Part shown: positions 1 to 29,546 of the stretch, one piece after another
Layout of the letters: each line of letters starts with the position of its first letter
How positions within the stretch are numbered: position 1 is the first letter of the stretch
Assembly: GCA_964247055.1 (NCBI GenBank)
Contig: OZ176059.1
Coordinates: forward strand, 3,224,001-3,288,000
From: Paragordius varius
Lineage: Eukaryota; Animalia; Nematomorpha
Direction of reading: 5' to 3'
Length of the DNA: 64,000 bases
Notes under the pieces: model-generated
Seen by the model: the letters and a program-made list of their open reading frames with translations, nothing else
What the model was told of the DNA's origin: nothing
Database searches by the model: none
Position numbers and translations under genes: made by a program

Positions 1-1599
1 ACCAGAATTTGTAGTTAAATTTTAGGAAGAAAACTTGATTTTATTGGAATTAAAAATTAATTTTGTTAAGAACAATATTCATTTAAAATACAGTAAAAAC
101 TGGCATTCTACTGGAAAAATTTCTATTTTTTAGTAAAATTTTCAAAGAAACCTTCACATTTACTGATAATATCACATACTTTTCAAATCTTAAGTAATAA
201 ATTTTAGTTTATATCTAAAGATTTAGGAAAATATCTAAATTTTTACTGTAAAAATTGCGAATTTTTAAAATTCATACTCATTTCTTAAGTTTTGAAATAA
301 TTCTAAGCAAAAACTCCATTTTTTTTCTAAAAAAAACAGAATAAATTTTTTTTTATTAGAAATAACTCTGAATAAGTTTTTTCATCTTTTGAGAATTATA
401 AATAAATTTTGTTAATATAAAAATTCATTTTTAAATAAGAAAAATTAAAAATAAATTAATTCTGTAAGAAATGTTAATTTTTTAAGTTTTTACTCATTTT
501 CCTGAAAATTTTTATATTATTTAAAATAGAGAATCCTCTCGTCAAATATATAAAATCTAATTTTTATTTTAAAACTTTAGAAAAATAATAATAATTTCTG
601 AATATTAAGATTTTTTTTCATTAAATATAGCATTTTTTCTATATTATTTTTTTTAATTAATTAATTTGAATTAAAGTGCTAATTTATGTTAATTAACTAT
701 ATTTATATTAATTTTTAATTATATTTCTATTATTTTTTAAAAAAATTTAAAATCATTTTATTTTTTTTATTATTTATTATATATATATATATATAACATT
801 TCTCCCATATTGTCTAAAATATGACATTCCTTGAAAACATATAACTAATTACAGAATAGGAATTAATATTCTTTTCTTTCCTTATGAAATGTTTGGCTCA
901 TAGATTCCCAATATATTATATTTTTTATTTTTTTAGATAAAATTAATTTTTATTATACAATAATTTATCAATTTTTTAAAACAGCAAAATATTTATAAAT
1001 CTTTTACTTATTGTCTCCTCCACAATTCTGAGTTAATAATTTGAGTTAAATAATATTAATTAATGTTATTAAAATATAAATGTTAAAATTTGTTTTTTTT
1101 AAATTTAATTATTTTTTAGGGAAAATTTAAAGAAAAATTTTATTTATTGTAATTCTTGATAATTTATCAAATTTTATCATAAATATTTACAAAAAACTCA
1201 TATTTTTTTAGTGAAAAATCAGAAAAAAAACTCAAATTTTGTTGAAAAAACTGAAAATTCTTCAACTTTTAACTCATTTATTCATGAATTATTCAGTAAA
1301 ATCATCAAAAAGTGTCAAAAATTCCAATTTTTAACAAAAATATTCATAATTTTAGTGTAAATTGTCTCAAAAATTCTTCATTTTAGTCAAAAAAAGAATG
1401 AAAATCAAGAATATTCATCATTCTTCAACAATATTCTTCATTCTTCTTTAGTAGTAGCTTAACATTTTCTTCATTCATTCATTCAATCTTGTATATGTGT
1501 GTGTGTCTCAACTAGAATCAACAACAAAAACCTTCTTCTCTCTCTTCTCTTCTTCTTCTTCTTCTTCATTTATTAATAGTAAGTGAGTGAATAAGTGTC

Positions 1600-1657
1600 C
1601 ATCACACACACATCAAATGAGTGATGACGTCATCACTCATTTGATGTGTGTGTGATG
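1600..1657. repeat. Perfect 58-bp loopless palindrome, arm type A (unit 1; also units 2 and 11)
   Basis: CATCACACACACATCAAATGAGTGATGAC|GTCATCACTCATTTGATGTGTGTGTGATG; the 29-nt arms are exact reverse complements. Confidence 0.98.
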
Positions 1658-3901
1658 TTGTTGTTGTTACACTTCTCTCTCACACATCACTCTTGTTGTA
1701 GCTGTTGTTGTAGTTGTTGTTGGTGGTGTTGCACATCTCTCTCTCTCTCTCTCATTCTCTCTCATATATGTATGTGATGAAATGAGTGTCATTTGTTATT
1801 TTTGATATTATATATATGTATATATAAAGAATGAAAAATGTTATTTTTGAATGAAAAATTGTTATTTTTGAATGAAATATTTTATTTTTTGTTGATTTTT
1901 TGATATTTTTTGAATATTTTTTTTAATTTTATTCTTATTTTTGAGTATTTTTTTAATTATTTTTGTTGAAATTTGACATTTTTGATGATTTTTTGAGGAT
2001 TTGATGAATATTTTGTGGATATTTTAGTTACTTTTTCTAGTTTTTACTCATTTTTTAATCAAAATTCTCATTTTTAAGTAGGAATAATTTAGTTTTTATT
2101 CAAAAAATTCTAAATTTGAGTAATTTTTACTCATTTTTTCTTATTTTTACTCATTTTTTGAAGAATTTTTGCTAAATTTCAAGAATAAATTCAATTTTTT
2201 GTCAAAAATATTCAAAAAAAATGAATTTTAACGAGTAAAAGTGTTAATTTTTCAAGATTTTTTTCATTTTTTCAAGAATTTCATCAAAAATTCAACTAAA
2301 AATTGATGTTTTATTCAAAAAATAAGAAAAATTCATCTTTTTAATCAAAAATTAGAGAAAAAAAGTTCATTTTTCAGTTAAAAATCACAAATTTTACTCA
2401 AAAAACTCAAAATTCTCCAACTTTTCATTCATTTATTCATGAATTATGAGAAAAACAAGCTTAAAAGTGTCAAAATTACCAATTTTCAACAATATTATTC
2501 ATTATTTCTAGTAAAATTGTCTCAAAAATCTTCATTCTTAGTCAAAAACAGTATAAAAAACAAGAATTTTCATCATTTCTTCAACAATATTCATTATTCT
2601 TCTTTAGTAGTAGCTTAACATTTTCTTCATTCATTCATTCAATCTTGTATATGTGTGTGTGTCTCAACTAGAATCAACAACAAAAACCTTCTTCTCTCTC
2701 TTCTCTTCTTCTTCTTCTTCTTCATTTATTAATAGTAAGTGAGTGAATAAGTGTCCATCACACACACATCAAATGAGTGATGACGTCATCACTCATTTGA
2801 TGTGTGTGTGATGTTGTTGTTGTTACACTTCTCTCTCACACATCACTCTTGTTGTAGCTGTTGTTGTAGTTGTTGTTGGTGGTGTTGCACATCTCTCTCT
2901 CTCTCTCTCATTCTCTCTCATATATGTATGTGATGAAATGAGTGTCATTTGTTATTTTTGATATTATATATATGTATATATAAAGAATGAAAAATGTTAT
3001 TTTTGAATGAAAAATTGTTATTTTTGAATGAAATATTTTATTTTTTGTTGATTTTTTGATATTTTTTGAATATTTTTTTTAATTTTATTCTTATTTTTGA
3101 GTATTTTTTTAATTATTTTTGTTGAAATTTGACATTTTTGATGATTTTTTGAGGATTTGATGAATATTTTGTGGATATTTTAGTTACTTTTTCTAGTTTT
3201 TACTCATTTTTTAATCAAAATTCTCATTTTTAAGTAGGAATAATTTAGTTTTTATTCAAAAAATTCTAAATTTGAGTAATTTTTACTCATTTTTTCTTAT
3301 TTTTACTCATTTTTTGAAGAATTTTTGCTAAATTTCAAGAATAAATTCAATTTTTTGTCAAAAATATTCAAAAAAAATGAATTTTAACGAGTAAAAGTGT
3401 TAATTTTTCAAGATTTTTTTCATTTTTTCAAGAATTTCATCAAAAATTCAACTAAAAATTGATGTTTTATTCAAAAAATAAGAAAAATTCATCTTTTTAA
3501 TCAAAAATTAGAGAAAAAAAGTTCATTTTTCAGTTAAAAATCACAAATTTTACTCAAAAAACTCAAAATTCTCCAACTTTTCATTCATTTATTCATGAAT
3601 TATGAGAAAAACAAGCTTAAAAGTGTCAAAATTACCAATTTTCAACAATATTATTCATTATTTCTAGTAAAATTGTCTCAAAAATCTTCATTCTTAGTCA
3701 AAAACAGTATAAAAAACAAGAATTTTCATCATTTCTTCAACAATATTCATTATTCTTCTTTAGTAGTAGCTTAACATTTTCTTCATTCATTCATTCAATC
3801 TTGTATATGTGTGTGTGTCTCAACTAGAATCAACAACAAAAACCTTCTTCTCTCTCTTCTCTTCTTCTTCTTCTTCTTCATTAATAATAATATTCTTCTT
3901 C

Positions 3902-3959
3902 ACAACAACACTCACCACAAGAGTGATGACGTCATCACTCTTGTGGTGAGTGTTGTTGT
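3902..3959. repeat. Perfect 58-bp loopless palindrome, arm type B (unit 3; related arms in units 4, 5, 9, 10, 12, 14, 15)
   Basis: ACAACAACACTCACCACAAGAGTGATGAC|GTCATCACTCTTGTGGTGAGTGTTGTTGT. Confidence 0.97.
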
Positions 3960-6900
3960 TGTTACATCTCTCTCTCACCACTCACTCTCTCACACACACA
4001 TACTAGTAGTTGTTGTTGTAGTTGTTGCTGCACATCTCTCTCTCTCATTTATGTATGTGGATGAAATGAGTGTAGATTTGTTATTTTTGTTATTTTTGTT
4101 ATTATATATATATGTATATATATTATATATAGAGAAGAAGAATTGTTATTTTTGAATGAAAAATAGGACAATTTTAAGAATTTTTAAATGAAAAATTGTT
4201 ATTTTTTGTGAAATTTTGTTAATTTTTTTATTTTTTGAGTATTTTTTGATATTTTTTGAATATTTTTTTTTAATTTTTCAATTGTTTTTGTTATTTTTTA
4301 TTATTTTTTTGGTTTATAAATGACATTTTTGAACAATTTTTGAATTTTTTGTGGATATTTTACTTATTTTTTGACATTTTTTCTAGTTTTTATTCATTTT
4401 TTGATTAAATTTCTCAATTTTGAGTGAGAAATAATTGATTCTTATTCAAAAAATTCTGAATTTTTGTAATTTTCACTTGATTTTTGAAGAATTTTTACTA
4501 AATTTCAAGAATAAATTCAATTTTTTGTCAAAAATGTTCAAAAAAAATGATTTTTATTGGATAAAAGTGTTAATTTTTCAAGATTTTAATCATTTTTTCA
4601 AGAATTTTTGATTAATTTCAACTAAAAATTCATTTTTTATTCAAAAAATAAGAAATAATCATCTTTTTAATCAAAAATTAGAGAAAAAAATGAATTTTTC
4701 TAGAAAAAAACTCAATTTTTAATGAAAAATAATCAAAATTCTCCAACTTTTCATTCATTTATTCATAAATTATGAGAAAAATAACCTTAAAAAGTAATCA
4801 AAATATCATTTTTAAGTGTAATATTCATAAATATTCATCAAAATTGTCTCAAAATCTTCATTTTTATTCAAAAAATGATGAAAATCAAGAATGACACTTA
4901 TTTATTCAACAATATTCTTCATTCTTCTTCTAGTAGTAGTGTAACATTTTCATCATTCATTCATTTATTCATGTATGTATGTGTTTGTGTCAACAAGAAT
5001 CAACAACAAAACCTTCTTCTCTCTCAACTCTTCTCTTCTTCTTCTTCATCACTCACAACAACAACACTCACCACAAGAGTGATGACGTCATCACTCTTGT
5101 GGTGAGTGTTGTTGTAGTTACACATTCTCTCTCTCTCTCTCTCTCCACTCTCACACACATCACTCTTAATTGTTGTTGTTGTAGTTGTTGTTGTACATGG
5201 TGCACAATGTGTGTCTCTCTCTCTCTCTCTCATTTATGAATGTTGATGAAATGAGTGATGGTTTGTTATTTTTGTTTGTTATTTTTATTCTTATATATAT
5301 ATGTATATATAATATATAGAGAAGAAGAATTGTTATTTTTGAATGAAAAATAGGACAATTTTAAGAATTTTTAAATGAAAAATTGTTATTTTTTGTGAAA
5401 TTTTGTTAATTTTTTTATTTTTTGAGTATTTTTTGATATTTTTTGAATATTTTTTTTTAATTTTTCAATTGTTTTTGTTATTTTTTATTATTTTTTTGGT
5501 TTATAAATGACATTTTTGAACAATTTTTGAATTTTTTGTGGATATTTTACTTATTTTTTGACATTTTTTCTAGTTTTTATTCATTTTTTGATTAAATTTC
5601 TCAATTTTGAGTGAGAAATAATTGATTCTTATTCAAAAAATTCTGAATTTTTGTAATTTTCACTTGATTTTTGAAGAATTTTTACTAAATTTCAAGAATA
5701 AATTCAATTTTTTGTCAAAAATGTTCAAAAAAAATGATTTTTATTGGATAAAAGTGTTAATTTTTCAAGATTTTAATCATTTTTTCAAGAATTTTTGATT
5801 AATTTCAACTAAAAATTCATTTTTTATTCAAAAAATAAGAAATAATCATCTTTTTAATCAAAAATTAGAGAAAAAAATGAATTTTTCTAGAAAAAAACTC
5901 AATTTTTAATGAAAAATAATCAAAATTCTCCAACTTTTCATTCATTTATTCATAAATTATGAGAAAAATAACCTTAAAAAGTAATCAAAATATCATTTTT
6001 AAGTGTAATATTCATAAATATTCATCAAAATTGTCTCAAAATCTTCATTTTTATTCAAAAAATGATGAAAATCAAGAATGACACTTATTTATTCAACAAT
6101 ATTCTTCATTCTTCTTCTAGTAGTAGTGTAACATTTTCATCATTCATTCATTTATTCATGTATGTATGTGTTTGTGTCAACAAGAATCAACAACAAAACC
6201 TTCTTCTCTCTCAACTCTTCTCTTCTTCTTCTTCATCACTCACAACAACAACACTCACCACAAGAGTGATGACGTCATCACTCTTGTGGTGAGTGTTGTT
6301 GTAGTTACACATTCTCTCTCTCTCTCTCTCTCCACTCTCACACACATCACTCTTAATTGTTGTTGTTGTAGTTGTTGTTGTACATGGTGCACAATGTGTG
6401 TCTCTCTCTCTCTCTCTCATTTATGAATGTTGATGAAATGAGTGATGGTTTGTTATTTTTGTTTGTTATTTTTATTCTTATATATATATGTATATATAAT
6501 ATATAGAGAAGAAGAATTGTTATTTTTGAATGAAAAATAGGACAATTTTAAGAATTTTTAAATGAAAAATTGTTATTTTTTGTGAAATTTTGTTAATTTT
6601 TTTATTTTTTGAGTATTTTTTGATATTTTTTGAATATTTTTTTTTAATTTTTCAATTGTTTTTGTTATTTTTTATTATTTTTTTGGTTTATAAATGACAT
6701 TTTTGAACAATTTTTGAATTTTTTGTGGATATTTTACTTATTTTTTGACATTTTTTCTAGTTTTTATTCATTTTTTGATTAAATTTCTCAATTTTGAGTG
6801 AGAAATAATTGATTCTTATTCAAAAAATTCTGAATTTTTGTAATTTTCACTTGATTTTTGAAGAATTTTTACTAAATTTCAAGAATAAATTCAATTTTTT

Positions 6901-9900
6901 GTCAAAAATGTTCAAAAAAAATGATTTTTATTGGATAAAAGTGTTAATTTTTCAAGATTTTAATCATTTTTTCAAGAATTTTTGATTAATTTCAACTAAA
7001 AATTCATTTTTTATTCAAAAAATAAGAAATAATCATCTTTTTAATCAAAAATTAGAGAAAAAAATGAATTTTTCTAGAAAAAAACTCAATTTTTAATGAA
7101 AAATAATCAAAATTCTCCAACTTTTCATTCATTTATTCATAAATTATGAGAAAAATAACCTTAAAAAGTAATCAAAATATCATTTTTAAGTGTAATATTC
7201 ATAAATATTCATCAAAATTGTCTCAAAATCTTCATTTTTATTCAAAAAATGATGAAAATCAAGAATGACACTCATTTCTTCAACAATTTCTTCATCATTC
7301 TTCTTTAGTAGTAGTAGTGTAACATTTTCATCATTCATTCATTCAATCATGTATGTGTTTGTGTCATTAACAAGAATCAACAACAAAACCTTCTTCTCTC
7401 TCAACTCTTCTCTTCTTCTTCTTCTTCATCTAATAATAATAATATTCTTCTTCACAACAACACTCACAACAAGAGTGATGACGTCATCACTCTTGTTGTG
7501 AGTGTTGTTGTTGAACACTCATCTCTCTCTCTCTCACACACACTCTCACCACTCACACATCATTCTTGTTGTTGTAGTTGTTGTTGTTGGTGGTGGTGCA
7601 CATCTCTCTCTCTCTCTCTCACTCATTTATGTATGTGATGAAATGAGTGATGTTTGTTATTTTTATTTGATATATATGTATATGTATATAGAGAAGAAGA
7701 ATGAAAAATGTTATTTTTGAATGAAACATTGTTATTTTTGGTATAATATTGTTATTTTTGAATGAAATGTAGGATAATTTTAAGAATTTTTTTTATTTTT
7801 TGTTGAATTTTGTTATTTTTTAATCATTTTTTTAATTTTATTCATATTTTTGAATATTTTTTGTCATTTTTTTTTAATTTTTCAATTGTTTTTGTTATTT
7901 TTTATTATTTTTTTTGGTATATAAATGACATTTTTGATGATTATATGAATATTTTGTGGATATTTTAGTTGTTTTTTCTCATTTTCTCTAGTTTTTACTC
8001 ATTTTTTAATTAAATTTATTCATTTTTAAGTAGAAATAATGGATTTTTCATTTGAAAAAATTGATTTTTACACTAAAATTTGCAAATTTTTCTTATTTTT
8101 ACTCATTTTTTCTCACTTTTTTTGACAATTTTTGATAAATTTCAACTAAAAATTCATTTTTTATTCAAAAATATTCAAAAAAAATGAAATTTATTGAATA
8201 AAAGTGTTAATTTTTCAAGATTTTATTCATTTTTTCAAGAATTTTTGATAAATTTCAACTGAAAATTCATATTTTATTCAAAAAATGATGAAAAACAAGA
8301 ATAATCATCTATTCTACAACATTATTCTTCATCATTCTTCTTAGTAGTAGTAGTGTAACATTTTCAGCATTCATTCATTCAATCTTGTATGTATGTGTGT
8401 GTCAACAAGAATCAACAACAAAAACCTTCTTCTCTCTCATCTCTTCTCTTCTTCTTCTTCTTCATCTAATAATAATAATATTCTTCTTCAACAACACTCA
8501 CAACAAGAGTGATGACGTCATCACTCTTGTGGTGAGTGTTGTTGTTGTAGTTACACACTCACTCCACTCACTCACACACTACTAGTTGTTGTTGTTGTAG
8601 TTGTTGTTGGACTATGTGGGTGTGTCTCTCATTCTCACTCATTTATATATGTATGTGGATGAAATGAGTGTCATTTGTTATTTTTGTTTGTTATTTTTGT
8701 TATTATTATTATATATGTATATGTATATAGAGAAGAAGAATTGTTATTTTTCAATGAAACATTGTTATTTTTGAATGAAAATTTGTTATTTTTGATTATT
8801 TTTTGAATATTTTTAATTTTTTTGAATAATTTTGAGTATTTTTTAATTATTTTTGTTATTTTTTCATTAAAATTAATATTTTTGAAGAATATTTTGGTTT
8901 AAAAATGACATTTTTGATGATTTTATGAATATTTTTACTATATTTTGGATATTTTATATTAATTTTTTGTAATTTTTACTCATTTTTAATTAAAATTCTC
9001 AATTTTGAGTGAGAAATAATTCATTTTTATTCAAAAAATACTAAATTTTCACAAATTTCACTTATTTTTTCAAGAATTTCTAGTAAATTTTAAAAAAAAT
9101 TCAATTTTTATTCAAAAATATTCAAAAAAAATGAATTTTAGCGAGTAAAAGTGTTAATTTTTTAAGATTTTAATCATTTTTTCAACAATTTTTCATAAAT
9201 TCCAACTAAAAATTCATTTTTTTGTCAAAAATTAGAGAAAAGAATGAATTTTCATTCAAAAAACTAGAAAAAAACTCAAATTTTAATGAAAAAACTCTAA
9301 ATTTTTCAATTTTTAACTCAATTATTCATGAATTTTCACAAAAAAACCTTAAAAAGTATCAAAAATGTCAATTTTCAACAAAAATATTCATAATTTCATT
9401 AAGATTGTCCAAAATTGTTGAGTAAATCATCAAAAAAAGTGTCAAAATTGTCATCTAAACACAGAAATAATCTTGTTTTTCATTAAAATTGTCTAAAAAA
9501 TGTCACTTTCAAGTGTAATATTCATAAATATTCATCAAAATTGTCTCAAAATGCTTCATTTTCATTCAAAAAATGATGAAAAACAAGAATAACACTCATT
9601 TCTACAACAATATTCTTCATTCTTCTTCTAGTAGTAGTTGTGTAACATTTTCTTCATTCATTCATTCTATCTTGTATATGTGTGTGTGTCTCAACTAGAA
9701 TCAACAACAAAAACCTTCTTCTCTCTCTACTCTTCTCTTCTTCTTCTTCTACTCTAATAATAATAATATTCTTCTTCTACAACAACACACACAACAAGAG
9801 TGATGACGTCATCACTCTTGTTGTGTGTGTAGTTGTTGTTGTTACTCTCTCTCTCTCACACACATACAAGAGTAGTGATGATGTTGGTTGTTGTAGTTGT

Positions 9901-12900
9901 GGTTGTGTATCTCTCTCTCATTTATGTATGTGATGGAATGAGAGATGGTTTGTTATTTTTGTTTGTTAATTTTGTTATTATATATATGTATATATAATAT
10001 ATAGAGAAGAAGAATGAAGAATGTTATTTTTGAATGAAACATTGTTATTTAAGAATGATATATGATATTTTTGGTTGAATTTTGTTAATTTTTAATATTT
10101 TTTTGTTGAAAATGATGATTTTTTGATTAAAATTATTAATTTTAAACATTTTTTGAATTTTGTTCATATTTTTGATGAATATTTTGTGGATTTTTTAATT
10201 ATTTTTGTTGAAATTTGACATTTTTGAAGATTTTATCTTGTTTCTGATGTTAAAAATAATATTTTTTTTAATTTTTTTGAGAGAAATGACAATTTTAAAC
10301 AAGATTTATTCATTTTTTATTCAAAAAATACTCAATTTTTACAAATTTCACTTTTTTTTGAAGAATTTCTAGTAAATTTTAAGAAAAAATTCAATTTTTA
10401 CTCAAAAATATTCAAAAAAAATGATTTTTTATCAAAAAAAGTGTCAATTTTTGAAATTTTTATTCATTTTTGTGACAATTTTAGAGAAATTTCAACTAAA
10501 AATTCAATTTTTTGTCAAAAACTAGAGAAAAAAATGAATTTTTGTTCAAAAAAAGTGTCAATTTTTGAAATTTTTGTTCAATTTTGTAAGAATTTCTCAA
10601 AAATTTTAAGAAAAAACATCCTTTCTGTTCAAAAAAGAATGAAAAATACATTTTTTATTCAAAATTCATAGAAAAAATATTCAATTTTAGTTAAAAATTA
10701 GAAAAAAACTCAAAATTCTTCAAATTTTAACTCATTTATTCATGAATTTTGAGTAAAATCATCTAAAATTGTATCAAAATTGTTATTTTCAACAAAAATA
10801 TTAATAATTCTAGTAAAATTGTTTCAAAAATCTTCATTTTAGTCAAAAAACAGTATAAAAACAAGAATTTCTTCATTTCTTCAACAATATTCATCATTCT
10901 TCTTAGTAGTAGTAGTGTAACATTTTCATCATTCATTCATTCAATCATGTATGTATGTGTGTGCGTCAACAAGAATCAACAACAAAAACCTTCTTCTCTC
11001 TCTACTCTTCTTCTTCTTCTTCAACTAATAATAATAGTAAGTGAGTAAGTGTCACTCACAACAACAACACTCACCACAAGAGTGATGACGTCATCACTCT
11101 TGTGGTGAGTGTTGTTGTGTATACATCTCTCTCTCTCACACACATCATTCTTGTAGTTGTTGTTGTAGTTGTTGCTGCTACACATCTTTCTCTCTCAATT
11201 GTGTATATGAATGAGATATATGTATTTGTTATTTTTGTTATTTTTATTATTATATATATATGTATATGTATATAGAGAAGAAGAATGAAGAATGATATTT
11301 TTGAATGAAACATTGTTATTTTTTGTTGAATAATAGGAAAATTTTAAGAATATTTTTTGTTGAAATTGAATATTTTTTTTAATTTTTTGAATTTTTTTGA
11401 TTATTTTTTTTAATTTTTTAATTAATTTTGTTACTTTTTATCATTTTTTTGGTTTTTAAATGACATTTTTGAACAATTTTTGAAGATTTGATGAATATTT
11501 TAGTTATTTTTTGTCTTTTTTTTGTACTATTTACTCATTTTTTAATAAAAAATTCAATTTTGACGATGAATTATTCATTTTTTATTCAAAAAATTCTGAA
11601 TTTTTGTAATTTTCACTTATTTTTTGAAGAATTTCTGCTCAATTTCAAGAGAAAATTCAGTTTTGACTCAAAAATAATGAATTTTATTCAAAAAAAGTGT
11701 CAATTTCTCAAATTTTTGTTGAATTTTGTAAGAATTTCTCAAAAATTTCATGAAAAAACATCATTTTTGTTCAAAAAATAAGAAAAATTCATCTTTTTAA
11801 TCAAAAAATCAAGAAAAAAATTCAATTTTTACTGAAAAAACACAAAATTCTTCAACTTTTCATTCATTTATTCAAGAATTATTCAGTAAAATCATCAAAA
11901 AATGTCAAAATTTTCAATTTAAAACATAAATATTCATTAATTTTCATTAAAAATGTCAAAAATTCTTCATTTTTATCAAAAAAATTGTCAAAATTGTCAT
12001 TTTTAAGTGTAATATTCATTAATTTTTATTAAAATTGTCTTAAAAATGTCATTTTTAGTCAAAAAACAGTATAAAAATCAAGAATGACACTCATTTATTC
12101 AACATTTTCTTCATTATTCTTGTTTAGTAGTAGTAGTGTAACATTCTCTTCATTCATTCATTCATTCATGTATATATGTGTTTGTGTCAACAAGAATCAA
12201 CAACAAAAACCTTCTTCTCTCTCTACTCTTCTTCTTCTTCTTCAACTAATAATAATAGTAAGTGAGTAAGTGTCACTCACAACAACAACACTCACCACAA
12301 GAGTGATGACGTCATCACTCTTGTGGTGAGTGTTGTTGTGTATACATCTCTCTCTCTCACACACATCATTCTTGTAGTTGTTGTTGTAGTTGTTGCTGCT
12401 ACACATCTTTCTCTCTCAATTGTGTATATGAATGAGATATATGTATTTGTTATTTTTGTTATTTTTATTATTATATATATATGTATATGTATATAGAGAA
12501 GAAGAATGAAGAATGATATTTTTGAATGAAACATTGTTATTTTTTGTTGAATAATAGGACAATTTTAAGAATTTTGTTGAATTTTTTGAGTATTTTTTAA
12601 TATTTTTTGAGTATTTTTTGATTTTTTTTGTTTAATAAAGAATATTTTTGTTGCAAAATGTCAATTTTTTTGTTTAAATTTGACAATTTTGAGAGTTTTT
12701 ACTTATTTTTGAAGAATTTTTCGATACATTTTAGGAGAAAATAACATTTTTATTCATGATATTCAAAATAAAATTCATTTTTACAGTAAAAATTGCAAAT
12801 ATTCTATAATTTTTGCTTGTTTTTACTCATTTTTACTCATTTTTTCTAGAATTATTGAATAATCACATGAAAATTGTCAATTTTTACTCAAAAATATTCA

Positions 12901-18900: not shown

Positions 18901-21900
18901 TTGTAGTTGAACAATGATTCTCTCTCTCATTTATGTATGTGGATGAAATGAGTGAAATGAGTGTCATTTGTTATTTTTGGTTTGTTATTTTTGTTATTAT
19001 ATATATGTATATGTATATATATAGAGAAGAATGAAAAATGTTATTTTTGAATGAAACATTATTATTTTTGGTGTAAAATTGTTATTTTTGAATATTTTTT
19101 TAATTTTTTTTTCATTTTTGAGTATTTTTTAATTGTTTTTGAGTATTTTTTTTAATTTTATTCATATTTTTGAGTATTTTTTGAATTATTTTTGTTGAAA
19201 TTTGACATTTTTGAAGATTTATTCTTGTTTTTAATGTTAAAAATGACATTTTTAAGTAGGAATAATTCAGTTTTTATTCTAAATAATTGATTTTTACAGT
19301 AAAATTAGCAAATTTTTACTTAATTTTGATTGTTTTTACTCATTTTGATTCATTTTTTTGACAATATTAGAAAAATAACAGAAAAAAACACAATTCTTAT
19401 TCAAAAATTGAAGAATAAATTCATTTTTATTGAAAAATTTCTCAATTTTGAAAGATTTTTCTCATTTCTGTGAGAATTTTTGATAAATTTCAACTAAAAA
19501 TTCATTTTTGTGTCAAAAATTTAAGAAAAAATTCATTTTTTCAGTGAAAAATTAGAAAAAAAACTAAATTTTAAGTGAAAAAACTGAAAATTCTTCAAAA
19601 ATTAAGCCATTTATTCATGAATTTTGACTAAAATAACCTTAAAAGTGTCAAAATATTCAATTTAACACAGAAATATTCATAAATTTAGTAAAAATGTGTC
19701 AAAAATGTCAATTTTAAGTGTAAAATTCATAAATTTAGTAAAAAGTGTCTTAAAAATGTTCATTTTTAGTCAAAAATCAGTATAAAAATCAAGAATATTC
19801 ATTATTCTTCAACAATATTCTTCATTCTTCTTTAGTAGTAGTAGTAGTGTATCATTTTCATCATTCATTCATTTAATCATGTATGTGTTTGTGTGTGTCA
19901 ACAAGAATCATCAACAAAAACCTTCTTCTCTCTCTTCTCTACTCTTCTTCTTCTTCATTAATTAACAAGTGTCCATCACAACTACACTCACAACAAGAGT
20001 GATGACGTCATCACTCTTGTTGTGAGTGTTGTAGTAGTTGTTACACACTCTTTCTCTCTCTCACACACATACACTGTAGAGTAGTGATGATGTTGTTGTT
20101 GGATGTGTAGCTACATCTCTCATTCTCTCTCATTTATGTATGTTGATGAAATGAGTGATGATTTGTTATTTTTGTACATATATATATATTTGTTATTTTT
20201 GTTATTATATATATGTATATATAATATAGAGAAGAAGAATTGTTATTTTTTGATTAAATAAAGACAATTTTAGTATTTTTTTATTTTATTCATTTTTTGA
20301 GTATTTTTAATTATTTTTTAAATATTTTTGAGTATTTTTTATCATTTTTTAATTATTTTTGTTAATTTTTATCATTTTTTTGGTTTATAAATGTCATTTT
20401 TGAACAATTTTTGAAGAAGTGATGAATATTTTGTGGATATTTTAGTCATTTTTTCTAGTTTTTACTCATTTTTGATTAAAATTGTTAATTTTGAGTGAGA
20501 AATAATTAATTTTTATTCAAAAAATTGGGAATTTTTGTAATTTTCACTCATTTTTTGAAGATTTTTTGCTAAATTTCAAGAAAAAATTCAATTTTTATTC
20601 AGAAATTTGAGAAAAAAATCATTTTTTCATCAAAAAAAGTGTTATTTTTTTAAATTTTATTCATTTTTTCAAGAATTTTTGATAATTTTCAACTAAAAAT
20701 TCATTTTTTAAATCAAAAATACAAGAAAAATGATCAATTTTAGTCAAAAATTAGAAAAAAAACTCAAATTTTGTTGAAAAAACTGAAAATTCTTGAAGTT
20801 TTAACTCTATTATTCATGAAAAATTAATAAAAATCATTAAAAAGTGTCAAAAATGTCATTTTAACACAGAAATATTCAAAAATTTAGTAAAAAAGTGTCA
20901 AAAATGTCAATTTTAATAGTAATATTCAGAAATTTAGTAAAAATTGTCTCAAAATCTTCATTTTTATTCAAAAAAAGAATGAAAATCAAGAATAACACTC
21001 ATTTCTTCAACAATATTCTTCATTCTTCTTCTAGTAGTAGTGAGTAACATTTACATCATTCATTCATTTAATCATGTATGTATGTGTGTGTCAACAAGAA
21101 TCAACAACAAAAACATTCTTCTCTCTCTTCTCTTCTTCTTCTTCTTCAACTAATAATAATAATAATATTCTTCTTCACAACAACACTCACAACAAGAGTG
21201 ATGACGTCATCACTCTTGTTGTGAGTGTTGTAGTAGTTGTTACACACTCTTTCTCTCTCTCACACACATACACTGTAGAGTAGTGATGATGTTGTTGTTG
21301 GATGTGTAGCTACATCTCTCATTCTCTCTCATACATGTATGTGATGAAATGAGTGATGTTTGTTATTTTTGTTTGTTATTTTTGTTTGTTATTTTTATTA
21401 TTATTATTATTATTATATTATAGAGAAGAAGAATGAATATTGTTATTTTTGAATGAAACATTGTTATTTTTGAATGAAATATAGGATAATTTTAAGAATT
21501 TTTTTTTATTTTTTTATTTTTTTGAATATTTTTGAATATTTTTTCTAATTTTATTGATTATTTTTTTTATTTTTTTAATTATTTTTGTTACTTTTTATCA
21601 TTTTTTTGATTTATAAATGACATTTTTGAACAATTTTTGAATATTTTGTGGATATTTGACTTATTTTTTGTCATTTTTTACTCATTTTTAATTAAAATTT
21701 CATTTTTATGTAGGAATAATTTAGTTTTTAATCAAAAAAATTCAAAATTTTAACATTTTTATTCATTTTTTTGACAATTTTTGTTAAATTTCAACTTAAA
21801 ATTCAATTTTTCAATCAAAATCTAGAGAAAATATTCATTTTTTACTGTAAAATTTCAAAAAAAAGTGAATTTTTAGTGAGAAAATTCTTAATTTTTCAAG

Positions 21901-22430
21901 ATTTTTGTTCATTTTTTCAAAATTATCGAGTAAAACATCAAAAAAAGTGTCAAAAATGTCATTTTCATACAAAAATATTCTTGTATTTCATAAAAATTGT
22001 CCAAAAATCTTCTTATTCATTCAAAAATTAGAGAAAAATTATCATTTTTAGTGAAAAAATAGAAAAAAAACTCAAATTTTACTCAAAAAACTGAAAATTC
22101 TTCAAAAATTAACCCATTTATTCATGAATTTTGACTATAATAACCTTAAAAGTGTCCAAAATGTCAATTTAAAGCATAAATATTCATTAATTTAGTAATA
22201 TTGTCTCAAAAATCCTCATTTTTATTCAAAAATAAGTGTAAAACAAGAATATTTAGTATTTCTTCAACAATATTCATCATTCTTCTTTAGTAGTAGTGTA
22301 ACAATCTTCATTCATTCATTCAATCATGTATGTGTGTATGTGTGTCAACAAGAAACAACAACAAAAACCTTCTTCTCTCTCAATTCTTCTCTTCTTCTTC
22401 TTCTACTCTACTAATAATAATATTCTTCTT

Positions 22431-22490
22431 CACAACCACACACACAACAAGAGTGATGACGTCATCACTCTTGTTGTGTGTGTGGTTGTG
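22431..22490. repeat. Perfect 60-bp loopless palindrome, arm type D (unit 18; identical in unit 19)
   Basis: CACAACCACACACACAACAAGAGTGATGAC|GTCATCACTCTTGTTGTGTGTGTGGTTGTG. Confidence 0.97.
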
Positions 22491-25400
22491 TTACACACTC
22501 ATCTCTCTCTCTCACACACACACATCACACATACACTAGTAGTTGTTGTTGTTGGTGGTGGTGGTGCACAACTCTCTCTCTCATTTATGTATGTGAATGA
22601 AATGAGTGTCATTTGTTATTTTTGTTTGTTATTTTTATTATTATTATTATTATTATATTATAGAGAAGAAGAATGAATATTGTTATTTTTGAATGAAACA
22701 TTGTTATTTTTGAATGAAATATAGGATAATTTTAAGAATTTTTTTTTATTTTTTTATTTTTTTGAATATTTTTGAATATTTTTTCTAATTTTATTGATTA
22801 TTTTTTTTATTTTTTTAATTATTTTTGTTACTTTTTATCATTTTTTTGATTTATAAATGACATTTTTGAACAATTTTTGAATATTTTGTGGATATTTGAC
22901 TTATTTTTTGTCATTTTTTACTCATTTTTAATTAAAATTTCATTTTTATGTAGGAATAATTTAGTTTTTAATCAAAAAAATTCAAAATTTTAACATTTTT
23001 ATTCATTTTTTTGACAATTTTTGTTAAATTTCAACTTAAAATTCAATTTTTCAATCAAAATCTAGAGAAAATATTCATTTTTTACTGTAAAATTTCAAAA
23101 AAAAGTGAATTTTTAGTGAGAAAATTCTTAATTTTTCAAGATTTTTGTTCATTTTTTCAAAATTATCGAGTAAAACATCAAAAAAAGTGTCAAAAATGTC
23201 ATTTTCATACAAAAATATTCTTGTATTTCATAAAAATTGTCCAAAAATCTTCTTATTCATTCAAAAATTAGAGAAAAATTATCATTTTTAGTGAAAAAAT
23301 AGAAAAAAAACTCAAATTTTACTCAAAAAACTGAAAATTCTTCAAAAATTAACCCATTTATTCATGAATTTTGACTATAATAACCTTAAAAGTGTCCAAA
23401 ATGTCAATTTAAAGCATAAATATTCATTAATTTAGTAATATTGTCTCAAAAATCCTCATTTTTATTCAAAAATAAGTGTAAAACAAGAATATTTAGTATT
23501 TCTTCAACAATATTCATCATTCTTCTTTAGTAGTAGTGTAACAATCTTCATTCATTCATTCAATCATGTATGTGTGTATGTGTGTCAACAAGAAACAACA
23601 ACAAAAACCTTCTTCTCTCTCAATTCTTCTCTTCTTCTTCTTCTACTCTACTAATAATAATATTCTTCTTCACAACCACACACACAACAAGAGTGATGAC
23701 GTCATCACTCTTGTTGTGTGTGTGGTTGTGTTACACACTCATCTCTCTCTCTCACACACACACATCACACATACACTAGTAGTTGTTGTTGTTGGTGGTG
23801 GTGGTGCACAACTCTCTCTCGCATTTATGTATGTGAATGAAATGAGTGTCATTTGTTATTTTTGTTTGTTATTTTTATTATTATTATTATTATTATATTA
23901 TATAGAAGAAGAATGAATATTGTTATTTTTGAATGAAAAATAGGACAATTTTAAATATTTTTTTTTATTTTTTGAATATTTTTTAATTTTTTTTAATCAT
24001 TTTATTATTTTTATTCATATTTTTGAGTATTTTTTGAATTATTTTTGTTGAAATTTGTTATTTTTGATGCTTTTTTGAGGATTTGATGAATATTTTGTGG
24101 ATATTTTAGTTACTTTTTCTAGTTTTTACTCATTTTTTCTAATTTTTACTCATTTAACTGAGAATTTTTGCTAAATTTCAAGAATAAATTCAATTTTTTG
24201 TCAAAAATATTCAAAAAAATGATTTTTTCATCAAAAAAAGTGTTAATTTTTGAATTTTTCACTCATTTTTTCAAGAATTATTTATAAATTTTAACTGAAA
24301 ATTCATTTTTTATTCAATATTTGTTAAAAAAATTTATTTTTTTAGTAAAAATTAGAAAAAAAACTCAATTTTTACTGAAAAATTTCAAAATTCTCCATAT
24401 ATTCACTCATTTTTCAAGAATTAATCATAAAAATTAACAGAAAAACTCAATTTTTAATGAAAAAAACTCAAAATTCTTCAAAAATTAACCCATTTATTCA
24501 TGAATTTTGACTAAAATAACCTTAAAAGTGTCAAAAATGTCAGTTTAACACAGAAATAATCTTGTTTTTCATTAGAATTGTCTCAAAATTGTCACTTTTA
24601 AACAAAATTATTCATATTTTTCAATAAAAATCCTCAAAATTCTTCATTTTTATTCAAAAAATGATGAAAAACAAGAATATTCATTATTTCTTCAACATTA
24701 CTCTTCATTCTTCTTTAGTAGTAGTAATGTAACATTTTCATCATTCATTCATTTAATCATGTATGTGTGTATGTGTGTCAACAAGAATCAACAACAAAAA
24801 CCTTCTTCTCTCTCTTCTTCTTCTTCTTCTTCAACTAATAATAATAATATTCCTCTTCAACAACTACACTCACCACAAGAGTGATGACGTCATGACTCTT
24901 GTTGTGTGTGTTGTTGTTGTTACACACTCACACTTCTTTCTCTCTCTCTCCACTCACACACACATACACTAGTAGTTGTTGTTGCTGCACATCTCTCTCT
25001 CACACTCATTTGTATGTGATGAAATGAGTGATGTTTGTTATTTTTTATTTGTTATTTTTGTTATTATTATTATTATTATTATATATATGTATATAGAAGA
25101 AGAATGAAAAATTGTTATTTTTGAATGAAAAATAGGACAATTTTAAATATTTTTTTTTATTTTTTGAATATTTTTTAATTTTTTTTAATCATTTTATTAT
25201 TTTTATTCATATTTTTGAGTATTTTTTGAATTATTTTTGTTGAAATTTGTTATTTTTGATGCTTTTTTGAGGATTTGATGAATATTTTGTGGATATTTTA
25301 GTTACTTTTTCTAGTTTTTACTCATTTTTTCTAATTTTTACTCATTTAACTGAGAATTTTTGCTAAATTTCAAGAATAAATTCAATTTTTTGTCAAAAAT

Positions 25401-28400
25401 ATTCAAAAAAATGATTTTTTCATCAAAAAAAGTGTTAATTTTTGAATTTTTCACTCATTTTTTCAAGAATTATTTATAAATTTTAACTGAAAATTCATTT
25501 TTTATTCAATATTTGTTAAAAAAATTTATTTTTTTAGTAAAAATTAGAAAAAAAACTCAATTTTTACTGAAAAATTTCAAAATTCTCCATATATTCACTC
25601 ATTTTTCAAGAATTAATCATAAAAATTAACAGAAAAACTCAATTTTTAATGAAAAAAACTCAAAATTCTTCAAAAATTAACCCATTTATTCATGAATTTT
25701 GACTAAAATAACCTTAAAAGTGTCAAAAATGTCAGTTTAACACAGAAATAATCTTGTTTTTCATTAGAATTGTCTCAAAATTGTCACTTTTAAACAAAAT
25801 TATTCATATTTTTCAATAAAAATCCTCAAAATTCTTCATTTTTATTCAAAAAATGATGAAAAACAAGAATATTCATTATTTCTTCAACATTACTCTTCAT
25901 TCTTCTTTAGTAGTAGTAATGTAACATTTTCATCATTCATTCATTTAATCATGTATGTGTGTATGTGTGTCAACAAGAATCAACAACAAAAACCTTCTTC
26001 TCTCTCTTCTTCTTCTTCTTCTTCAACTAATAATAATAATATTCCTCTTCAACAACTACACTCACCACAAGAGTGATGACGTCATGACTCTTGTTGTGTG
26101 TGTTGTTGTTGTTACACACTCACACTTCTTTCTCTCTCTCTCCACTCACACACACATACACTAGTAGTTGTTGTTGCTGCACATCTCTCTCTCACACTCA
26201 TTTGTATGTGATGAAATGAGTGATGTTTGTTATTTTTTATTTGTTATTTTTGTTATTATTATTATTATTATTATATATATGTATATAGAAGAAGAATGAA
26301 AAATTGTTATTTTTGAATGAAAAATAGGACAATTTTAAATATTTTTTTTTATTTTTTGAATATTTTTTAATTTTTTTTAATCATTTTATTATTTTTATTC
26401 ATATTTTTGAGTATTTTTTGAATTATTTTTGTTGAAATTTGTTATTTTTGATGCTTTTTTGAGGATTTGATGAATATTTTGTGGATATTTTAGTTACTTT
26501 TTCTAGTTTTTACTCATTTTTTCTAATTTTTACTCATTTAACTGAGAATTTTTGCTAAATTTCAAGAATAAATTCAATTTTTTGTCAAAAATATTCAAAA
26601 AAATGATTTTTTCATCAAAAAAAGTGTTAATTTTTGAATTTTTCACTCATTTTTTCAAGAATTATTTATAAATTTTAACTGAAAATTCATTTTTTATTCA
26701 ATATTTGTTAAAAAAATTTATTTTTTTAGTAAAAATTAGAAAAAAAACTCAATTTTTACTGAAAAATTTCAAAATTCTCCATATATTCACTCATTTTTCA
26801 AGAATTAATCATAAAAATTAACAGAAAAACTCAATTTTTAATGAAAAAAACTCAAAATTCTTCAAAAATTAACCCATTTATTCATGAATTTTGACTAAAA
26901 TAACCTTAAAAGTGTCAAAAATGTCAGTTTAACACAGAAATAATCTTGTTTTTCATTAGAATTGTCTCAAAATTGTCACTTTTAAACAAAATTATTCATA
27001 TTTTTCAATAAAAATCCTCAAAATTCTTCATTTTTATTCAAAAAATGATGAAAAACAAGAATATTCATTATTTCTTCAACATTACTCTTCATTCTTCTTT
27101 AGTAGTAGTAATGTAACATTTTCATCATTCATTCATTTAATCATGTATGTGTGTATGTGTGTCAACAAGAATCAACAACAAAAACCTTCTTCTCTCTCTT
27201 CTTCTTCTTCTTCTTCAACTAATAATAATAATATTCCTCTTCAACAACTACACTCACCACAAGAGTGATGACGTCATGACTCTTGTTGTGTGTGTTGTTG
27301 TTGTTACACACTCACACTTCTTTCTCTCTCTCTCCACTCACACACACATCACTCTTGTTGTAGTTGTTGTTGTTGCACATCTCTCTCTCTCTCACACACA
27401 TCAATTGTAAATGTGATGAAATGAGTGACTTTTGTTACTATATGTATTTGTTATTTTTGTTATTATTATTATTATTATATATATATGTATATATAAGAAG
27501 AATAAAAATTGTTATTTTTTGATTAAATAAAGACAATTTTAGGATTATTTTTTGTTGAGAAATGACATTTTTTGAATATTTTTTTATTTTTATTCATATT
27601 TTTGAATATTTTTTATCATTTTTTAATTGTTTTTGTTAATTTTTATCATTTTTTTGGTTTAAAAATGACATTTTTGAACATTTTTTGAATATTTTGTGGA
27701 TATTTTACTTATTTTTTATCATTTTTTCTCTTTTTTGCTCATTTTTCAATGATAATTCACAATTTTGACGATGAATAATTCATTTTTTATTTGAAAAATT
27801 CTAAATTTTTGTAATTTTTGATTATTTTTTCGAGTTTTTGTTCATTTTTTTGACAATTTTTCATGAATTTTAACAAAAAATTCATTTTTTATTCATAAAT
27901 TAGAGAAAAAAATGAATTTTTAAGTGAAAAATAAGAAAAAAAACTCAATTTTTAGTGAAAAAACTCAAATTTCATCAACTTTTTATTCATTTATTCATGA
28001 ATTATTCAGTAAAATCATTAAAAAGTGTCAAAATTGTCAATTTTCAACAAAAATATTCATAAATTTTCATTAAAAATGTCAAAAATTCTTCATTTTTATC
28101 AAAAAAATTGTCAAAATTGTCATTTTTAAGTGTAATATTGATGAATTTTCATTAGAATAACCTTAAAAAGTGTAAAAATTGTTAATTTTCATCAAACATA
28201 TTCATAATTCTAGTATAATTGTCTCAAAAAATCTTCATTTTTAGTCAAAAAACAGTATAAAAAACAAGAATGACACTCATTTCTACAACAATATTCTTCA
28301 TTCTTCTTTAGTAGTAGTGTAACATTTACATCATTCATTCATTCAATCATGTATATGTGTATGTCTCAACAAGAATCAACAACAAAAAACATTCTTCTCT

Positions 28401-29546
28401 CTCATCTCAACTCTTCTCTTCTTCTTCTTCTTCATCTAATAATAATAATATTCTTCTTCACAACAACACTCACAACAAGAGTGATGACGTCATCACTCTT
28501 GTTATGAGTGTTGTTGCACTCTCTCTCTCACTCACACACTAGTTGTTGTTGTAGTTGTTGGTGAAGAATGAATGTGTGTCTCTCTCTCATATATGTATGT
28601 GATGAAATGAGTGTCATTTGTTATTTTTGATTTGTTATTTTTGTTATTATTATATATATGTATATGTATATAGAGAAGAAGAAGGAAAATTGTTATTTTT
28701 GAATGTAACATTGTTATTTTTGTGTAATATTGTTATTTTTTGAATATTTTTTTAATTTTGTTATTTTTTGAGTATTTTTTATTATTTTTTGAATATTTTT
28801 TTTATTTTAAAAATATATTTTAGTAATAAAATTCAATTTTTTTGTTGAAAAATGACAATTTTATAATATTTTCTTAATTTTATTCATATTTTTGAACATT
28901 TTTAATTATTTTTTTGTTGAAAAATAATATTTTTTGATGATTTTTTTGTTAAAAAATGACATTTTTGATGATTTATTCTTGTTTTTAATGTTAAAAATGA
29001 TATTTTTTTGATTTTTTCAAGATTTGATGAATGTTTTGTGGTTTTAGTTATTTTTGATGAAATTTGACATTGAAGATTTATTCTTGTTTTTTGATGTTAA
29101 AAATGTTATTTTTCTTGATTTTTCGAGAGAATTGACAATTTTAATTAATTTATTACTTATATTTTTTAGTTAATTCTCATTTTATGACATTTATAAAATA
29201 TCAGAAAAAAACTTAATTTTTCTTTCTCCAAATTTAGATTTTTATTGAAAAAATAATATTAAAATTTAATTTTTTTATGAAATTCATTTTTAGTGAAAAA
29301 TTAGAGAATAAAATTTTTTAAGTACAAATCTAATATTACTTCATTTATACAGTAAAATTATCAAATTATCACTAATTTCTTTTAACTCATTTTTACTCAT
29401 TTTTTTAATAATTTTTGATAAAGTTTTAAGAAAGAATAAAATTTTATTTAAAAAATTCAAAAAAAATTATTTTTATTCAAAAAAACTGATAATTTCTCCA
29501 ATTTTTACTTATTTTTGTAAGATTGCTGGAAAATTTTAATTAAAAA

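What the first reader, a model, noticed from the sequence alone, without database searches (positions are those of the whole stretch)
1600..28520. Palindrome arms differ between units but change in mirror image within a unit
Seen: at least four arm types, each self-complementary: A (CATCACACACACATCAAAT / ATTTGATGTGTGTGTGATG; units 1, 2, 11), B (CACTCACCACAA / TTGTGGTGAGTG), C (CACTCACAACAA / TTGTTGTGAGTG; units 6, 16, 17) and D (CACAACCACACACACAACAA / TTGTTGTGTGTGTGGTTGTG; units 18, 19). Units 7 and 13 are hybrids (C left arm, B right arm). Inference: independent mutation cannot easily give such multi-base compensation. Either one arm is recopied from the other (template switch, cruciform resolution, hairpin opening) or base pairing is under selection. 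Hybrids would then be recombinants crossing at the centre. A constant core with variable stems resembles a family of hairpin guides.
Basis: partly seen in the sequence, partly recalled or inferred. Interest (0 to 1): 0.85.

Follow-up and report, generated by a model that had tools for sequence, protein, structure and literature searches.

The report
Self-mirroring palindrome in a satellite repeat
Each copy of a 1.2 kb non-coding tandem repeat in this AT-rich animal carries a roughly 58-letter palindrome whose two halves differ between copies yet mirror each other within a copy, most likely because one half is re-copied from the other during DNA replication or repair.

Summary
A 28.4 kb satellite (window 1192-29579) has 23 units of 1034-1332 bp. 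Each unit is centred on a palindrome with no spacer and the invariant octamer TGACGTCA.

- **Palindrome quality:** 13 of 23 palindromes have perfect half-arms of 28-30 nt. The other 10 carry 1-4 mismatches.
- **Arm types:** types A to D exist as described. There is also a type E (unit 8) and further hybrids (units 20-22 and 23).
- **Mirroring is more than linkage:** the two arms of one unit differ at 1.0 site on average, against 3.7 sites for the same arm in two different units (P = 5e-5, or 0.005 without type A). Five stem positions changed on both sides and none on one side only. Arm types are shuffled relative to their own flanks.
- **Direction of copying:** the type A right arm mirrors sequence that in related units exists only in the left flank. 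This points to DNA-level copying from left arm to right arm, as in template switching or hairpin repair.
- **What found no support:** RNA hairpins and "hairpin guides". Most changes are transversions, there is no G:U pattern, the window holds no targets, and Rfam gives only sub-threshold generic hairpin hits.
- **Hybrids:** units 20-22 look like recombinants joined at the centre. Units 7 and 13 are undecided.

The scan had already found this satellite on other DNA of the same genome.

The parts
1192..29579 (.). Tandem satellite array: 23 units of about 1.2 kb, non-coding, about 20% G+C. It starts and ends at the same phase of the unit (about unit position 695).
   Evidence: There are no ORFs of 150 aa or more under the standard code, no Pfam hit above threshold and no Rfam family above threshold.
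1600..1657 (.). Unit 1 palindrome, type A, perfect 29+29
2756..2813 (.). Unit 2 palindrome, type A, perfect 29+29 (recent duplicate of unit 1)
3902..3959 (.). Unit 3 palindrome, type B, perfect 29+29
5058..5115 (.). Unit 4 palindrome, type B, perfect 29+29
6245..6302 (.). Unit 5 palindrome, type B, perfect (duplicate of unit 4)
7454..7511 (.). Unit 6 palindrome, type C, perfect 29+29
8489..8544 (.). Unit 7 palindrome, hybrid C left / B right, one mismatch at position 15 from the centre
9779..9836 (.). Unit 8 palindrome, type E, one mismatch at position 24
11061..11118 (.). Unit 9 palindrome, type B, perfect
12282..12339 (.). Unit 10 palindrome, type B, perfect
13545..13602 (.). Unit 11 palindrome, type A, perfect, in flanks unlike those of units 1 and 2
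14870..14925 (.). Unit 12 palindrome, type B, perfect 28+28
16204..16255 (.). Unit 13 palindrome, hybrid C left / B right, mismatch at position 15 (plus outer mismatches)
17475..17532 (.). Unit 14 palindrome, type B, perfect; the left flank keeps the outer 'module' of an older, longer palindrome
18788..18845 (.). Unit 15 palindrome, type B, perfect
19978..20035 (.). Unit 16 palindrome, type C, with mismatches at positions 24 and 27
21177..21234 (.). Unit 17 palindrome, type C, with a mismatch at position 27
22431..22490 (.). Unit 18 palindrome, type D, perfect 30+30
23671..23730 (.). Unit 19 palindrome, type D, perfect 30+30 (duplicate of unit 18)
24858..24919 (.). Unit 20 palindrome, hybrid B-like left / E-like right, four mismatches (positions 6, 15, 19, 24), including a core change
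26050..26111 (.). Unit 21 palindrome, identical to unit 20
27242..27303 (.). Unit 22 palindrome, identical to unit 20
28461..28516 (.). Unit 23 palindrome, type C, with a private right-arm change at position 16

Best explanation
This is a non-coding 1.2 kb satellite whose monomer contains a spacer-less palindrome. The inner 20 bp (GAGTGATGACGTCATCACTC, holding the CRE-type octamer TGACGTCA) is held constant. I infer that a dimeric DNA-binding protein keeps it so. This is not shown.

The next roughly 19 nt of each arm drift at about the same rate as the conserved left flank. They are repeatedly re-symmetrised at the DNA level. When one arm changes, a hairpin forms on a single strand during replication or repair. 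That hairpin lets the new strand, or mismatch repair, copy one arm from the other. This is the known correction of quasi-palindromes by template switching.

A whole cluster of changes can be mirrored in one step this way. Units awaiting correction, or made by exchange between units, appear as hybrids. Unit duplication, unequal exchange and short conversion between units then spread and shuffle the palindrome types along the array.

**Shown:** the anatomy, the excess of mirrored changes, the lack of linkage between arms and flanks, and the polarity of the type A event.

**Inferred:** the molecular mechanism and any protein binding.
For: 1. **Arms of one unit are closer than they should be.** If the arms had simply diverged since an ancestral palindrome, the two arms of one unit should be no closer than arms of different units. 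Observed: 16 mismatches within 16 non-duplicate units, against 57 +/- 9 under random pairing (P = 5e-5). Without type A the P value is 0.005.
2. **Changes come in mirrored pairs.** Five stem positions changed on both sides and none on one side only. Controls with slid partners give 0.
3. **Type A differs massively yet is perfect.** It differs from B at 10 of 29 arm positions (ungapped), all mirrored. It occurs in two units with unrelated flanks.
4. **Polarity of the type A event.** The type A right arm ends in GATG, the complement of CATC. In related units 13-16, CATC is left-flank-only sequence (GTGTCCATC|ACAAC). The right flank (TTG)n-TTACAC lies intact just outside. So the right arm was re-synthesised from the left arm.
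5. **No sign of RNA-style compensation.** Six of the seven kinds of change are transversions. Only one of about nine kinds of mismatch could be a wobble pair, and only on one strand.
6. **Arms are unlinked from flanks.** Mantel r is 0.95 (0.70 on alignment blocks) between the arms, against 0.39 and 0.11 for an arm and its own flank.
7. **The hairpins are stable.** As single-stranded DNA the perfect units fold at -31 to -35 kcal/mol with a 4-nt loop.
8. **The mechanism is documented.** Template switching is known to homogenise and extend inverted-repeat arms and to give multi-base 'compensatory' changes in one event (PMC8794818, PMC5453318, PMC8604942, PMC13100816).
Against: - **Few independent events.** There are about four: the type A cluster, position 24 in type D, position 19 and position 15.
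- **Two of them are weak.** Positions 15 and 19 change towards (CAA)n or (CA)n microsatellite patterns, so parallel mutation in both arms is conceivable. Position 15 shows all four left/right combinations.
- **Correction is not fast.** There are about as many private unmirrored changes (units 8, 13, 16, 17, 20-22, 23) as mirrored events. An imperfect unit (20) was triplicated recently.
- **Template switching does not explain the centre.** It does not account for the four central bases being self-complementary or for the invariance of the core.
- **No direct evidence.** No reads, population data or RNA data could be examined.
- **Selection is not excluded.** Sequence alone cannot rule out selection for a cruciform or hairpin.
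Confidence: 0.6

Rival explanations
1. Selection on structure. The palindrome must extrude as a cruciform, or fold as a DNA or RNA hairpin, for some function such as a centromere or replication-origin mark, or a small-RNA precursor. Selection then keeps compensating changes that arose stepwise.
For: - The palindrome and about 300 bp around it are the best conserved part of an otherwise 50-80% identical monomer.
- Pairing is 98.5%.
- Dyad symmetries are a reported feature of centromeric satellites (PMC5889037).
- Perfect hairpins are strongly favoured energetically.
Against: - A 10-site mirrored difference, including a mirrored length change and a mirrored copy of flank-only sequence (type A), is hard to reach by stepwise selection.
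- There is no G:U or transition bias.
- The centre needs no pairing in a hairpin, yet it is perfectly symmetric.
- A unit with four mismatches was recently triplicated.
- Rfam gives only sub-threshold generic hairpin hits.
- RNA runs of the same species label hold next to none of the stretch's words.
Confidence: 0.2
2. No symmetrising process at all. A few ancient perfect palindrome lineages were spread by unit duplication. Parallel hot-spot mutation in the microsatellite-like arms, plus exchange between units, accounts for the rest.
For: - Positions 15 and 19 mutate towards (CAA)n or (CA)n.
- All four left/right combinations exist at position 15.
- Recent unit duplications are frequent: units 1=2, 4=5, 18=19 and 20=21=22.
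- Without type A the excess is only P = 0.005.
Against: It does not explain how types A, D and B each became perfect after diverging from one another at up to 10 sites per arm. Linkage cannot make the left arm of a unit closer to its own right arm than to the right arms of other units. Arm types are also not lineage-bound to their flanks.
Confidence: 0.08
3. The palindromes are abutted terminal inverted repeats of a transposon arranged head to tail. Both ends co-evolve because one transposase must recognise both.
For: - Each unit is compositionally mirror-like. It is T-rich to the right of the centre and A-rich to the left, with inverted sub-repeats.
- This genome has satellites born from transposons (earlier notes).
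Against: - The array does not begin or end at a half-palindrome. It starts about 430 bp left of the first centre and ends about 1.1 kb right of the last.
- No dispersed single copies were found in the window.
- No transposase ORF was found.
- No target-site duplication lies between the arms.
- In this reading the two arms of one palindrome belong to different neighbouring elements, so matching arms would need co-variation between neighbours.
Confidence: 0.05
4. Assembly artefact: fold-back or chimeric reads creating false palindromes.
For: I could not lay reads on the stretch.
Against: - There are 23 copies in diverged flanks with five or more arm variants.
- The same satellite was noted on other pieces of the assembly.
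- DNA runs from three studies hold 5-54% of the stretch's sampled words.
Confidence: 0.02

Closest known systems
[quoted passage not shown]
   Same: One arm of an inverted repeat becomes the exact complement of the other. Multi-base clusters are fixed in one step. Arms can be extended into former flank sequence, as in type A here.
   Different: Those cases are single loci compared between species or mutants. Here 23 paralogous copies in one array (and more elsewhere in the genome) show several states side by side. The palindrome has no spacer and is 56-60 bp long, longer than most documented cases. No event has been observed directly.
Satellite DNAs with dyad symmetry or protein-binding boxes at centromeres (PMC5889037; macro-dyad symmetries in Tribolium satellites, PMC13081366)
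   Same: An AT-rich tandem repeat with a conserved box and a dyad symmetry predicted to form non-B DNA.
   Different: The reported centromeric dyads are mostly under 10 bp. Here the palindrome is a perfect 58 bp with a CRE-type core. A centromeric location is unknown.
Palindromic AT-rich repeats (PATRRs) of human chromosomes and arm-to-arm gene conversion in large sex-chromosome palindromes
   Same: Palindromes exist as symmetric and asymmetric variants, and the arms evolve in concert.
   Different: PATRRs are single-locus, several hundred bp, AT-rich and recombinogenic. Sex-chromosome palindromes have kilobase-to-megabase arms with spacers and use homologous recombination. Arms of 29 nt are too short for that.
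cAMP-response element (CRE, TGACGTCA) bound by bZIP dimers
   Same: The octamer is present and invariant in 23 of 23 units and occurs nowhere else in the window.
   Different: It is embedded in a 20-bp invariant palindrome inside a satellite, not in a promoter. Binding was not tested.

Membership tests
Satellite DNA (tandem non-coding repeat) | Head-to-tail copies of one monomer, with many units | tested here: met
   23 units with spacing of 1034-1332 bp. Unit-to-unit similarity runs from 1192 to 29579.
Satellite DNA (tandem non-coding repeat) | No conserved coding capacity and no known RNA gene | tested here: met
   No ORF of 150 aa or more under the standard code. The short ORFs across the palindrome change frame between units. 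Pfam gives nothing above threshold. No Rfam family reaches its gathering score and there are no tRNAs.
Template-switch (quasi-palindrome) corrected inverted repeat | Differences between related copies are mirrored in both arms, more than linkage or chance allows | tested here: met
   P = 5e-5, five pairs changed on both sides, none on one side only.
Template-switch (quasi-palindrome) corrected inverted repeat | A cluster of changes in one arm equals the reverse complement of the adjacent arm, including sequence that was previously outside the repeat (polarity) | tested here: met
   The type A right arm mirrors the CATC of the left-flank module, and the original (TTG)n flank is retained outside it. 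This rests on one polarisable event only.
Template-switch (quasi-palindrome) corrected inverted repeat | Direct observation of conversion (before and after states at an orthologous locus) | not testable with these tools
miRNA, hairpin-RNA or 'hairpin guide' genes | Match to a curated family, or precursor-like architecture | tested here: not met
   There are only sub-threshold hits (23-37 bits against gathering scores of 55-150), scattered over unrelated animal and plant miRNA families. The perfect 27-bp stem with a 4-nt loop is not like an animal pre-miRNA.
miRNA, hairpin-RNA or 'hairpin guide' genes | Transcription, processing into small RNAs, and complementary targets | tested here: inconclusive
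   There are no matches to arm sequences outside the palindromes in this window. RNA-labelled runs hold next to none of the words. No reads were laid.
Abutted transposon termini (TIR-TIR junctions) | The array or element ends coincide with half-palindromes; solo copies exist; a transposase is present | tested here: not met
   The array ends lie about 430 bp and about 1.1 kb from the nearest centres. There are no solo copies in the window and no transposase ORF.
CRE / bZIP binding site | The octamer TGACGTCA | tested here: met
   Present in 23 of 23 units and nowhere else in 64 kb, where 0.15 are expected.
CRE / bZIP binding site | Bound by a bZIP dimer in vivo or in vitro | not testable with these tools
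   This needs EMSA, DAP-seq or ChIP.

The most novel reading that the evidence does not exclude
The invariant 20-bp core could be the landing site of a dimeric protein, either a bZIP-type factor or a structure-specific nuclease or resolvase. That protein would drive cruciform extrusion or hairpin nicking at every monomer. The arms would then be re-copied regularly, as a programmed, locus-specific 'self-symmetrising' system. Hundreds of perfect 58-bp palindromes would be kept as a functional chromosomal mark, for example a centromere or a replication origin.
Probability: 0.1. Interest if true: 0.8.

Novelty: new variant of a known kind. Interest (0 to 1): 0.5.

Why it matters
Long perfect palindromes without a spacer are usually unstable in eukaryotic genomes. 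How inverted repeats stay perfect is normally studied one locus at a time.

This array holds 23 paralogous copies in several states, and earlier notes of this scan report dozens more copies elsewhere in the genome. The states are perfect types, one-arm variants and a probable recombinant. That makes a natural replicated series. From it one could estimate the rate, tract length and direction of arm-to-arm copying relative to mutation and to exchange between units.

It also gives a concrete caution. Multi-base 'compensatory' covariation can arise without any RNA structure being selected.

If the CRE-like core is bound by a protein, the array would also be a large cluster of sites for that factor.

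Tried and rejected
- **Coding reading.** No long ORFs under the standard code. The many ORFs under the ciliate code lie in low-complexity sequence. ORFs crossing the palindrome shift frame between units, and Pfam gives nothing above threshold.
- **Known RNA genes** (5S, spliced leader, snRNA, tRNA). None found. The E-value mode gave only generic hairpin noise.
- **Strong extended inverted symmetry of the whole unit.** Only weak, low-complexity similarity and a compositional mirror were found.
- **Recombination hot spot at the palindrome centre.** Pairwise-alignment Mantel tests suggested the left and right flanks are unlinked (r = 0.09), while left-flank blocks are linked (r = 0.81). Alignment-column blocks, however, showed that neighbouring 80-bp blocks are unlinked almost everywhere in the central region. 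No specific hot spot can be claimed.
- **Relatives in public viral and metagenome contigs.** No exact match to the core.
- **Bacterial-type promoter and terminator scan.** Uninformative for an animal.
- **Reads.** Expression, small RNAs and independent read support therefore remain untested.
- **Organism.** It is coded in the tools and I did not try to identify it.

Full report
**What is there.** The window is about 20% G+C throughout. From 1192 to 29579 it holds one tandem array. The 16-mer GTGATGACGTCATCAC occurs 23 times, spaced 1034-1332 bp apart, against 0.03 expected by chance. Three adjacent identical units carry one core substitution. The octamer TGACGTCA occurs in all 23 units and nowhere else in 64 kb.

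Nothing suggests a gene:
- No ORF of 150 aa or more exists under the standard code. Short ORFs that cross the palindrome change frame between units.
- Pfam gives nothing above threshold.
- No Rfam family reaches its gathering score, and there are no tRNAs.

Earlier notes of this scan call the source an AT-rich animal. They record the same satellite on other pieces of the genome. So the scan found this before on other DNA. I treated those notes as leads only.

**Checking the observation.** I compared each left arm with the reverse complement of its right arm. Thirteen units have perfect half-arms of 28-30 nt, giving palindromes of 56-60 bp with no spacer. Ten units have 1-4 mismatches.

The additions are:
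- a type E in unit 8;
- a second hybrid class in units 20-22 (B-like left arm, E-like right arm, one core change);
- a private right-arm change in unit 23;
- outer mismatches in units 16 and 17.

The innermost 10 nt on each side form an invariant 20-bp core. Positions 11-19 carry the type-defining differences. In types B to E, positions 20-30 are a (CAA)n/(TTG)n microsatellite. Beyond the perfect part lies an older, longer quasi-palindrome. A left 'module' (GTGAGTG...GTGTCCATC) mirrors the right ACAC...CACTCAC imperfectly. The module is present in units 1, 2, 9-11 and 13-16 and deleted in the others.

**Is the mirroring more than chance or linkage?** On the alignment of the 23 palindromes, 98.5% of cells pair, against 21-56% when the partner columns are slid. 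Five stem positions changed on both sides and none on one side only. The covariation score is 0.118, against 0.033 in shuffles and 0.010 or less in slid controls.

Linkage alone cannot produce this. If the arms had merely diverged since an ancestral palindrome, a unit's left arm would be no closer to its own right arm than to the right arm of any other unit. I collapsed recent duplicates to 16 units and tested this:
- Own-arm mismatches total 16, against 57 +/- 9 for random pairing (P = 5e-5).
- Without type A the totals are 16 against 24 (P = 0.005).
- The same arm differs at 3.7 sites on average between units, against 1.0 between the two arms of one unit.

- Flanks are 45-85% identical between most units. 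There are a few recent duplicates: units 1=2, 4=5, 18=19 and 20=21=22.
- Units 2 and 3 share 90% of the left flank but carry types A and B.
- Type A sits in units 1/2 and 11, whose left flanks are 59% identical.
- The left-flank lineage of units 8, 12, 16, 17 and 20 carries types E, B, C, C and B-like.
- The module just outside the left arm occurs with types A, B and C.

Mantel correlations point the same way. The two arms correlate at r = 0.95 (0.70 on alignment-column blocks). An arm and its own 100-bp flank correlate at 0.39 and 0.11.

A first test suggested that genealogies are uncoupled specifically across the palindrome. The block analysis then showed that neighbouring 80-bp blocks are uncoupled almost everywhere in the central region. 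I therefore claim a mosaic array, not a hot spot at the centre.

**DNA copying or selected pairing?** Several points favour copying.
- Six of the seven kinds of change are transversions (A/T, C/A, T/A, A/C). These have no wobble intermediate.
- No pair varies on one side only. Of the mismatches present, only the one in unit 23 could be G:U, and only on the minus strand.
- Type A differs from type B at 10 of 29 arm positions, all mirrored.
- The type A right arm ends in GATG, the complement of CATC. In the related module-bearing units 13-16, CATC lies outside the palindrome on the left side only. The usual right flank, (TTG)n-TTACAC, sits untouched just beyond.

The simplest reading has two steps. 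A complex change arose in the left arm. Then one copying event rewrote the inner right arm from the left arm.

A possible donor exists for the first step. The inner type A arm (ATCAAATGAGTG) is 11/12 identical to a conserved motif about 150 bp to the right of nearly every centre. This is suggestive only.

This pattern matches what template-switch mutation is documented to do: create or repair perfect stems and give multi-base 'compensatory' changes in one event (PMC8794818, PMC5453318, PMC8604942, PMC13100816). The single strands would fold at -31 to -35 kcal/mol with a 4-nt loop.

**Limits.**
- There are only about four independent mirrored events.
- Positions 15 and 19 change towards microsatellite patterns, so parallel mutation in both arms is possible. 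Position 15 shows all four left/right combinations.
- Unmirrored private changes are about as numerous as mirrored events. A four-mismatch unit was recently triplicated. Correction is therefore slow or occasional.
- Copying does not explain the invariant, self-complementary centre. I infer, without a test, that the 20-bp core is held by something else, most simply a dimeric protein recognising the CRE-type site.
- The core is not uniquely conserved. Several 20-bp blocks in the left flank are conserved at 0.93-0.94, against 0.95-0.96 for the core.

**Hybrids.** Units 20-22 fit a recombinant joined inside the palindrome. Their left flank resembles unit 12 (83%, type B). Their right flank resembles unit 19 (84%, type D, close to E). 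Units 7 and 13 have B-like surroundings on both sides and differ only at left position 15. A one-arm change awaiting correction explains them as well as a crossover does.

**Hairpin guides.** Nothing supports this idea. Arm sequences occur only in the palindromes themselves. Rfam in E-value mode gives 23-37 bit hits to many unrelated miRNA families, including plant ones, far below their thresholds. The core has no exact match in the viral or metagenome contig collections.

**Reads.** DNA runs from three studies hold 5-54% of the sampled words of a 6-kb stretch. RNA-labelled runs of the same species label hold next to none. No read-level evidence exists here on expression, small RNAs or the assembly.

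**Verdict.** The inference that the arms are kept symmetric by a process beyond independent mutation is supported. DNA-level re-copying is the best explanation (confidence 0.6). Selection on structure is the main rival (0.2). The guide-RNA idea is unsupported. This is a new variant of a known kind: a satellite with a dyad, combined with quasi-palindrome correction. Its value is as a replicated natural series rather than as a new mechanism.

Noticed in passing
window 29671-30731 and 36850-37817 (+ strand motif TCGTCTGC); real copy at 36397-36404: The 8-mer TCGTCTGC occurs 18 times where 0.11 are expected. On the minus strand it reads GCAGACGA, which is the start of the eIF5A coding sequence (ATG GCA GAC GA., MADE...) in the exon at 36225-36407. 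Seventeen 'echo' copies of the start-codon region lie both upstream of the gene and beyond its 3' end, next to the satellite. This fits other readers' notes on a 'stuttering' eIF5A gene.
   Followed up: partly
each unit, e.g. window 2785-3940: Every monomer is compositionally mirror-like. It is T- and G-rich (almost no C) for about 500 bp to the right of the palindrome. It then switches to A- and C-rich up to the next palindrome. Its 10-11 bp and 30-31 bp sub-repeats (ATTTTTTGA / TCAAAAAAT) are reverse complements of each other. The whole array therefore alternates between two symmetry centres. Sequence-level inverted similarity is weak.
   Followed up: partly
about +150 bp from each centre, e.g. 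window 1777-1788, 4061-4072, 28602-28613: The conserved flank motif ATGAAATGAGTG is present in 20 units. It is 11/12 identical to the inner arm of type A (ATCAAATGAGTG). It may be the donor of the complex change that created type A.
   Followed up: partly
window 4900-6300, 22300-23730, 24700-27300, 1450-2820: Several neighbouring units are identical or nearly so over hundreds of bases (units 4=5, 18=19, 20=21=22, 1=2). Most other units are only 45-85% identical. The old array is therefore still gaining units by local single-unit duplication.
   Followed up: partly
left flank of units 1, 2, 9-11, 13-16, e.g. window 17440-17474: A module of about 35 bp (GTGAGTG...GTGTCCATC) lies just outside the left arm and is present or absent between units. 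It is an imperfect mirror of the right flank (ACAC...CACTCAC). The palindrome was therefore once longer, about 45 nt per arm, and has been eroded on the left in 14 units.
   Followed up: partly
They lie in the AT-rich part of unit 12/13, not in a palindrome.
   Followed up: no
window 40000-64000: The right third of the window is 16-19% G+C and dense with other short tandem and dispersed repeats. Tandem Repeats Finder returned 325 rows for the window. I did not examine this region.
   Followed up: no
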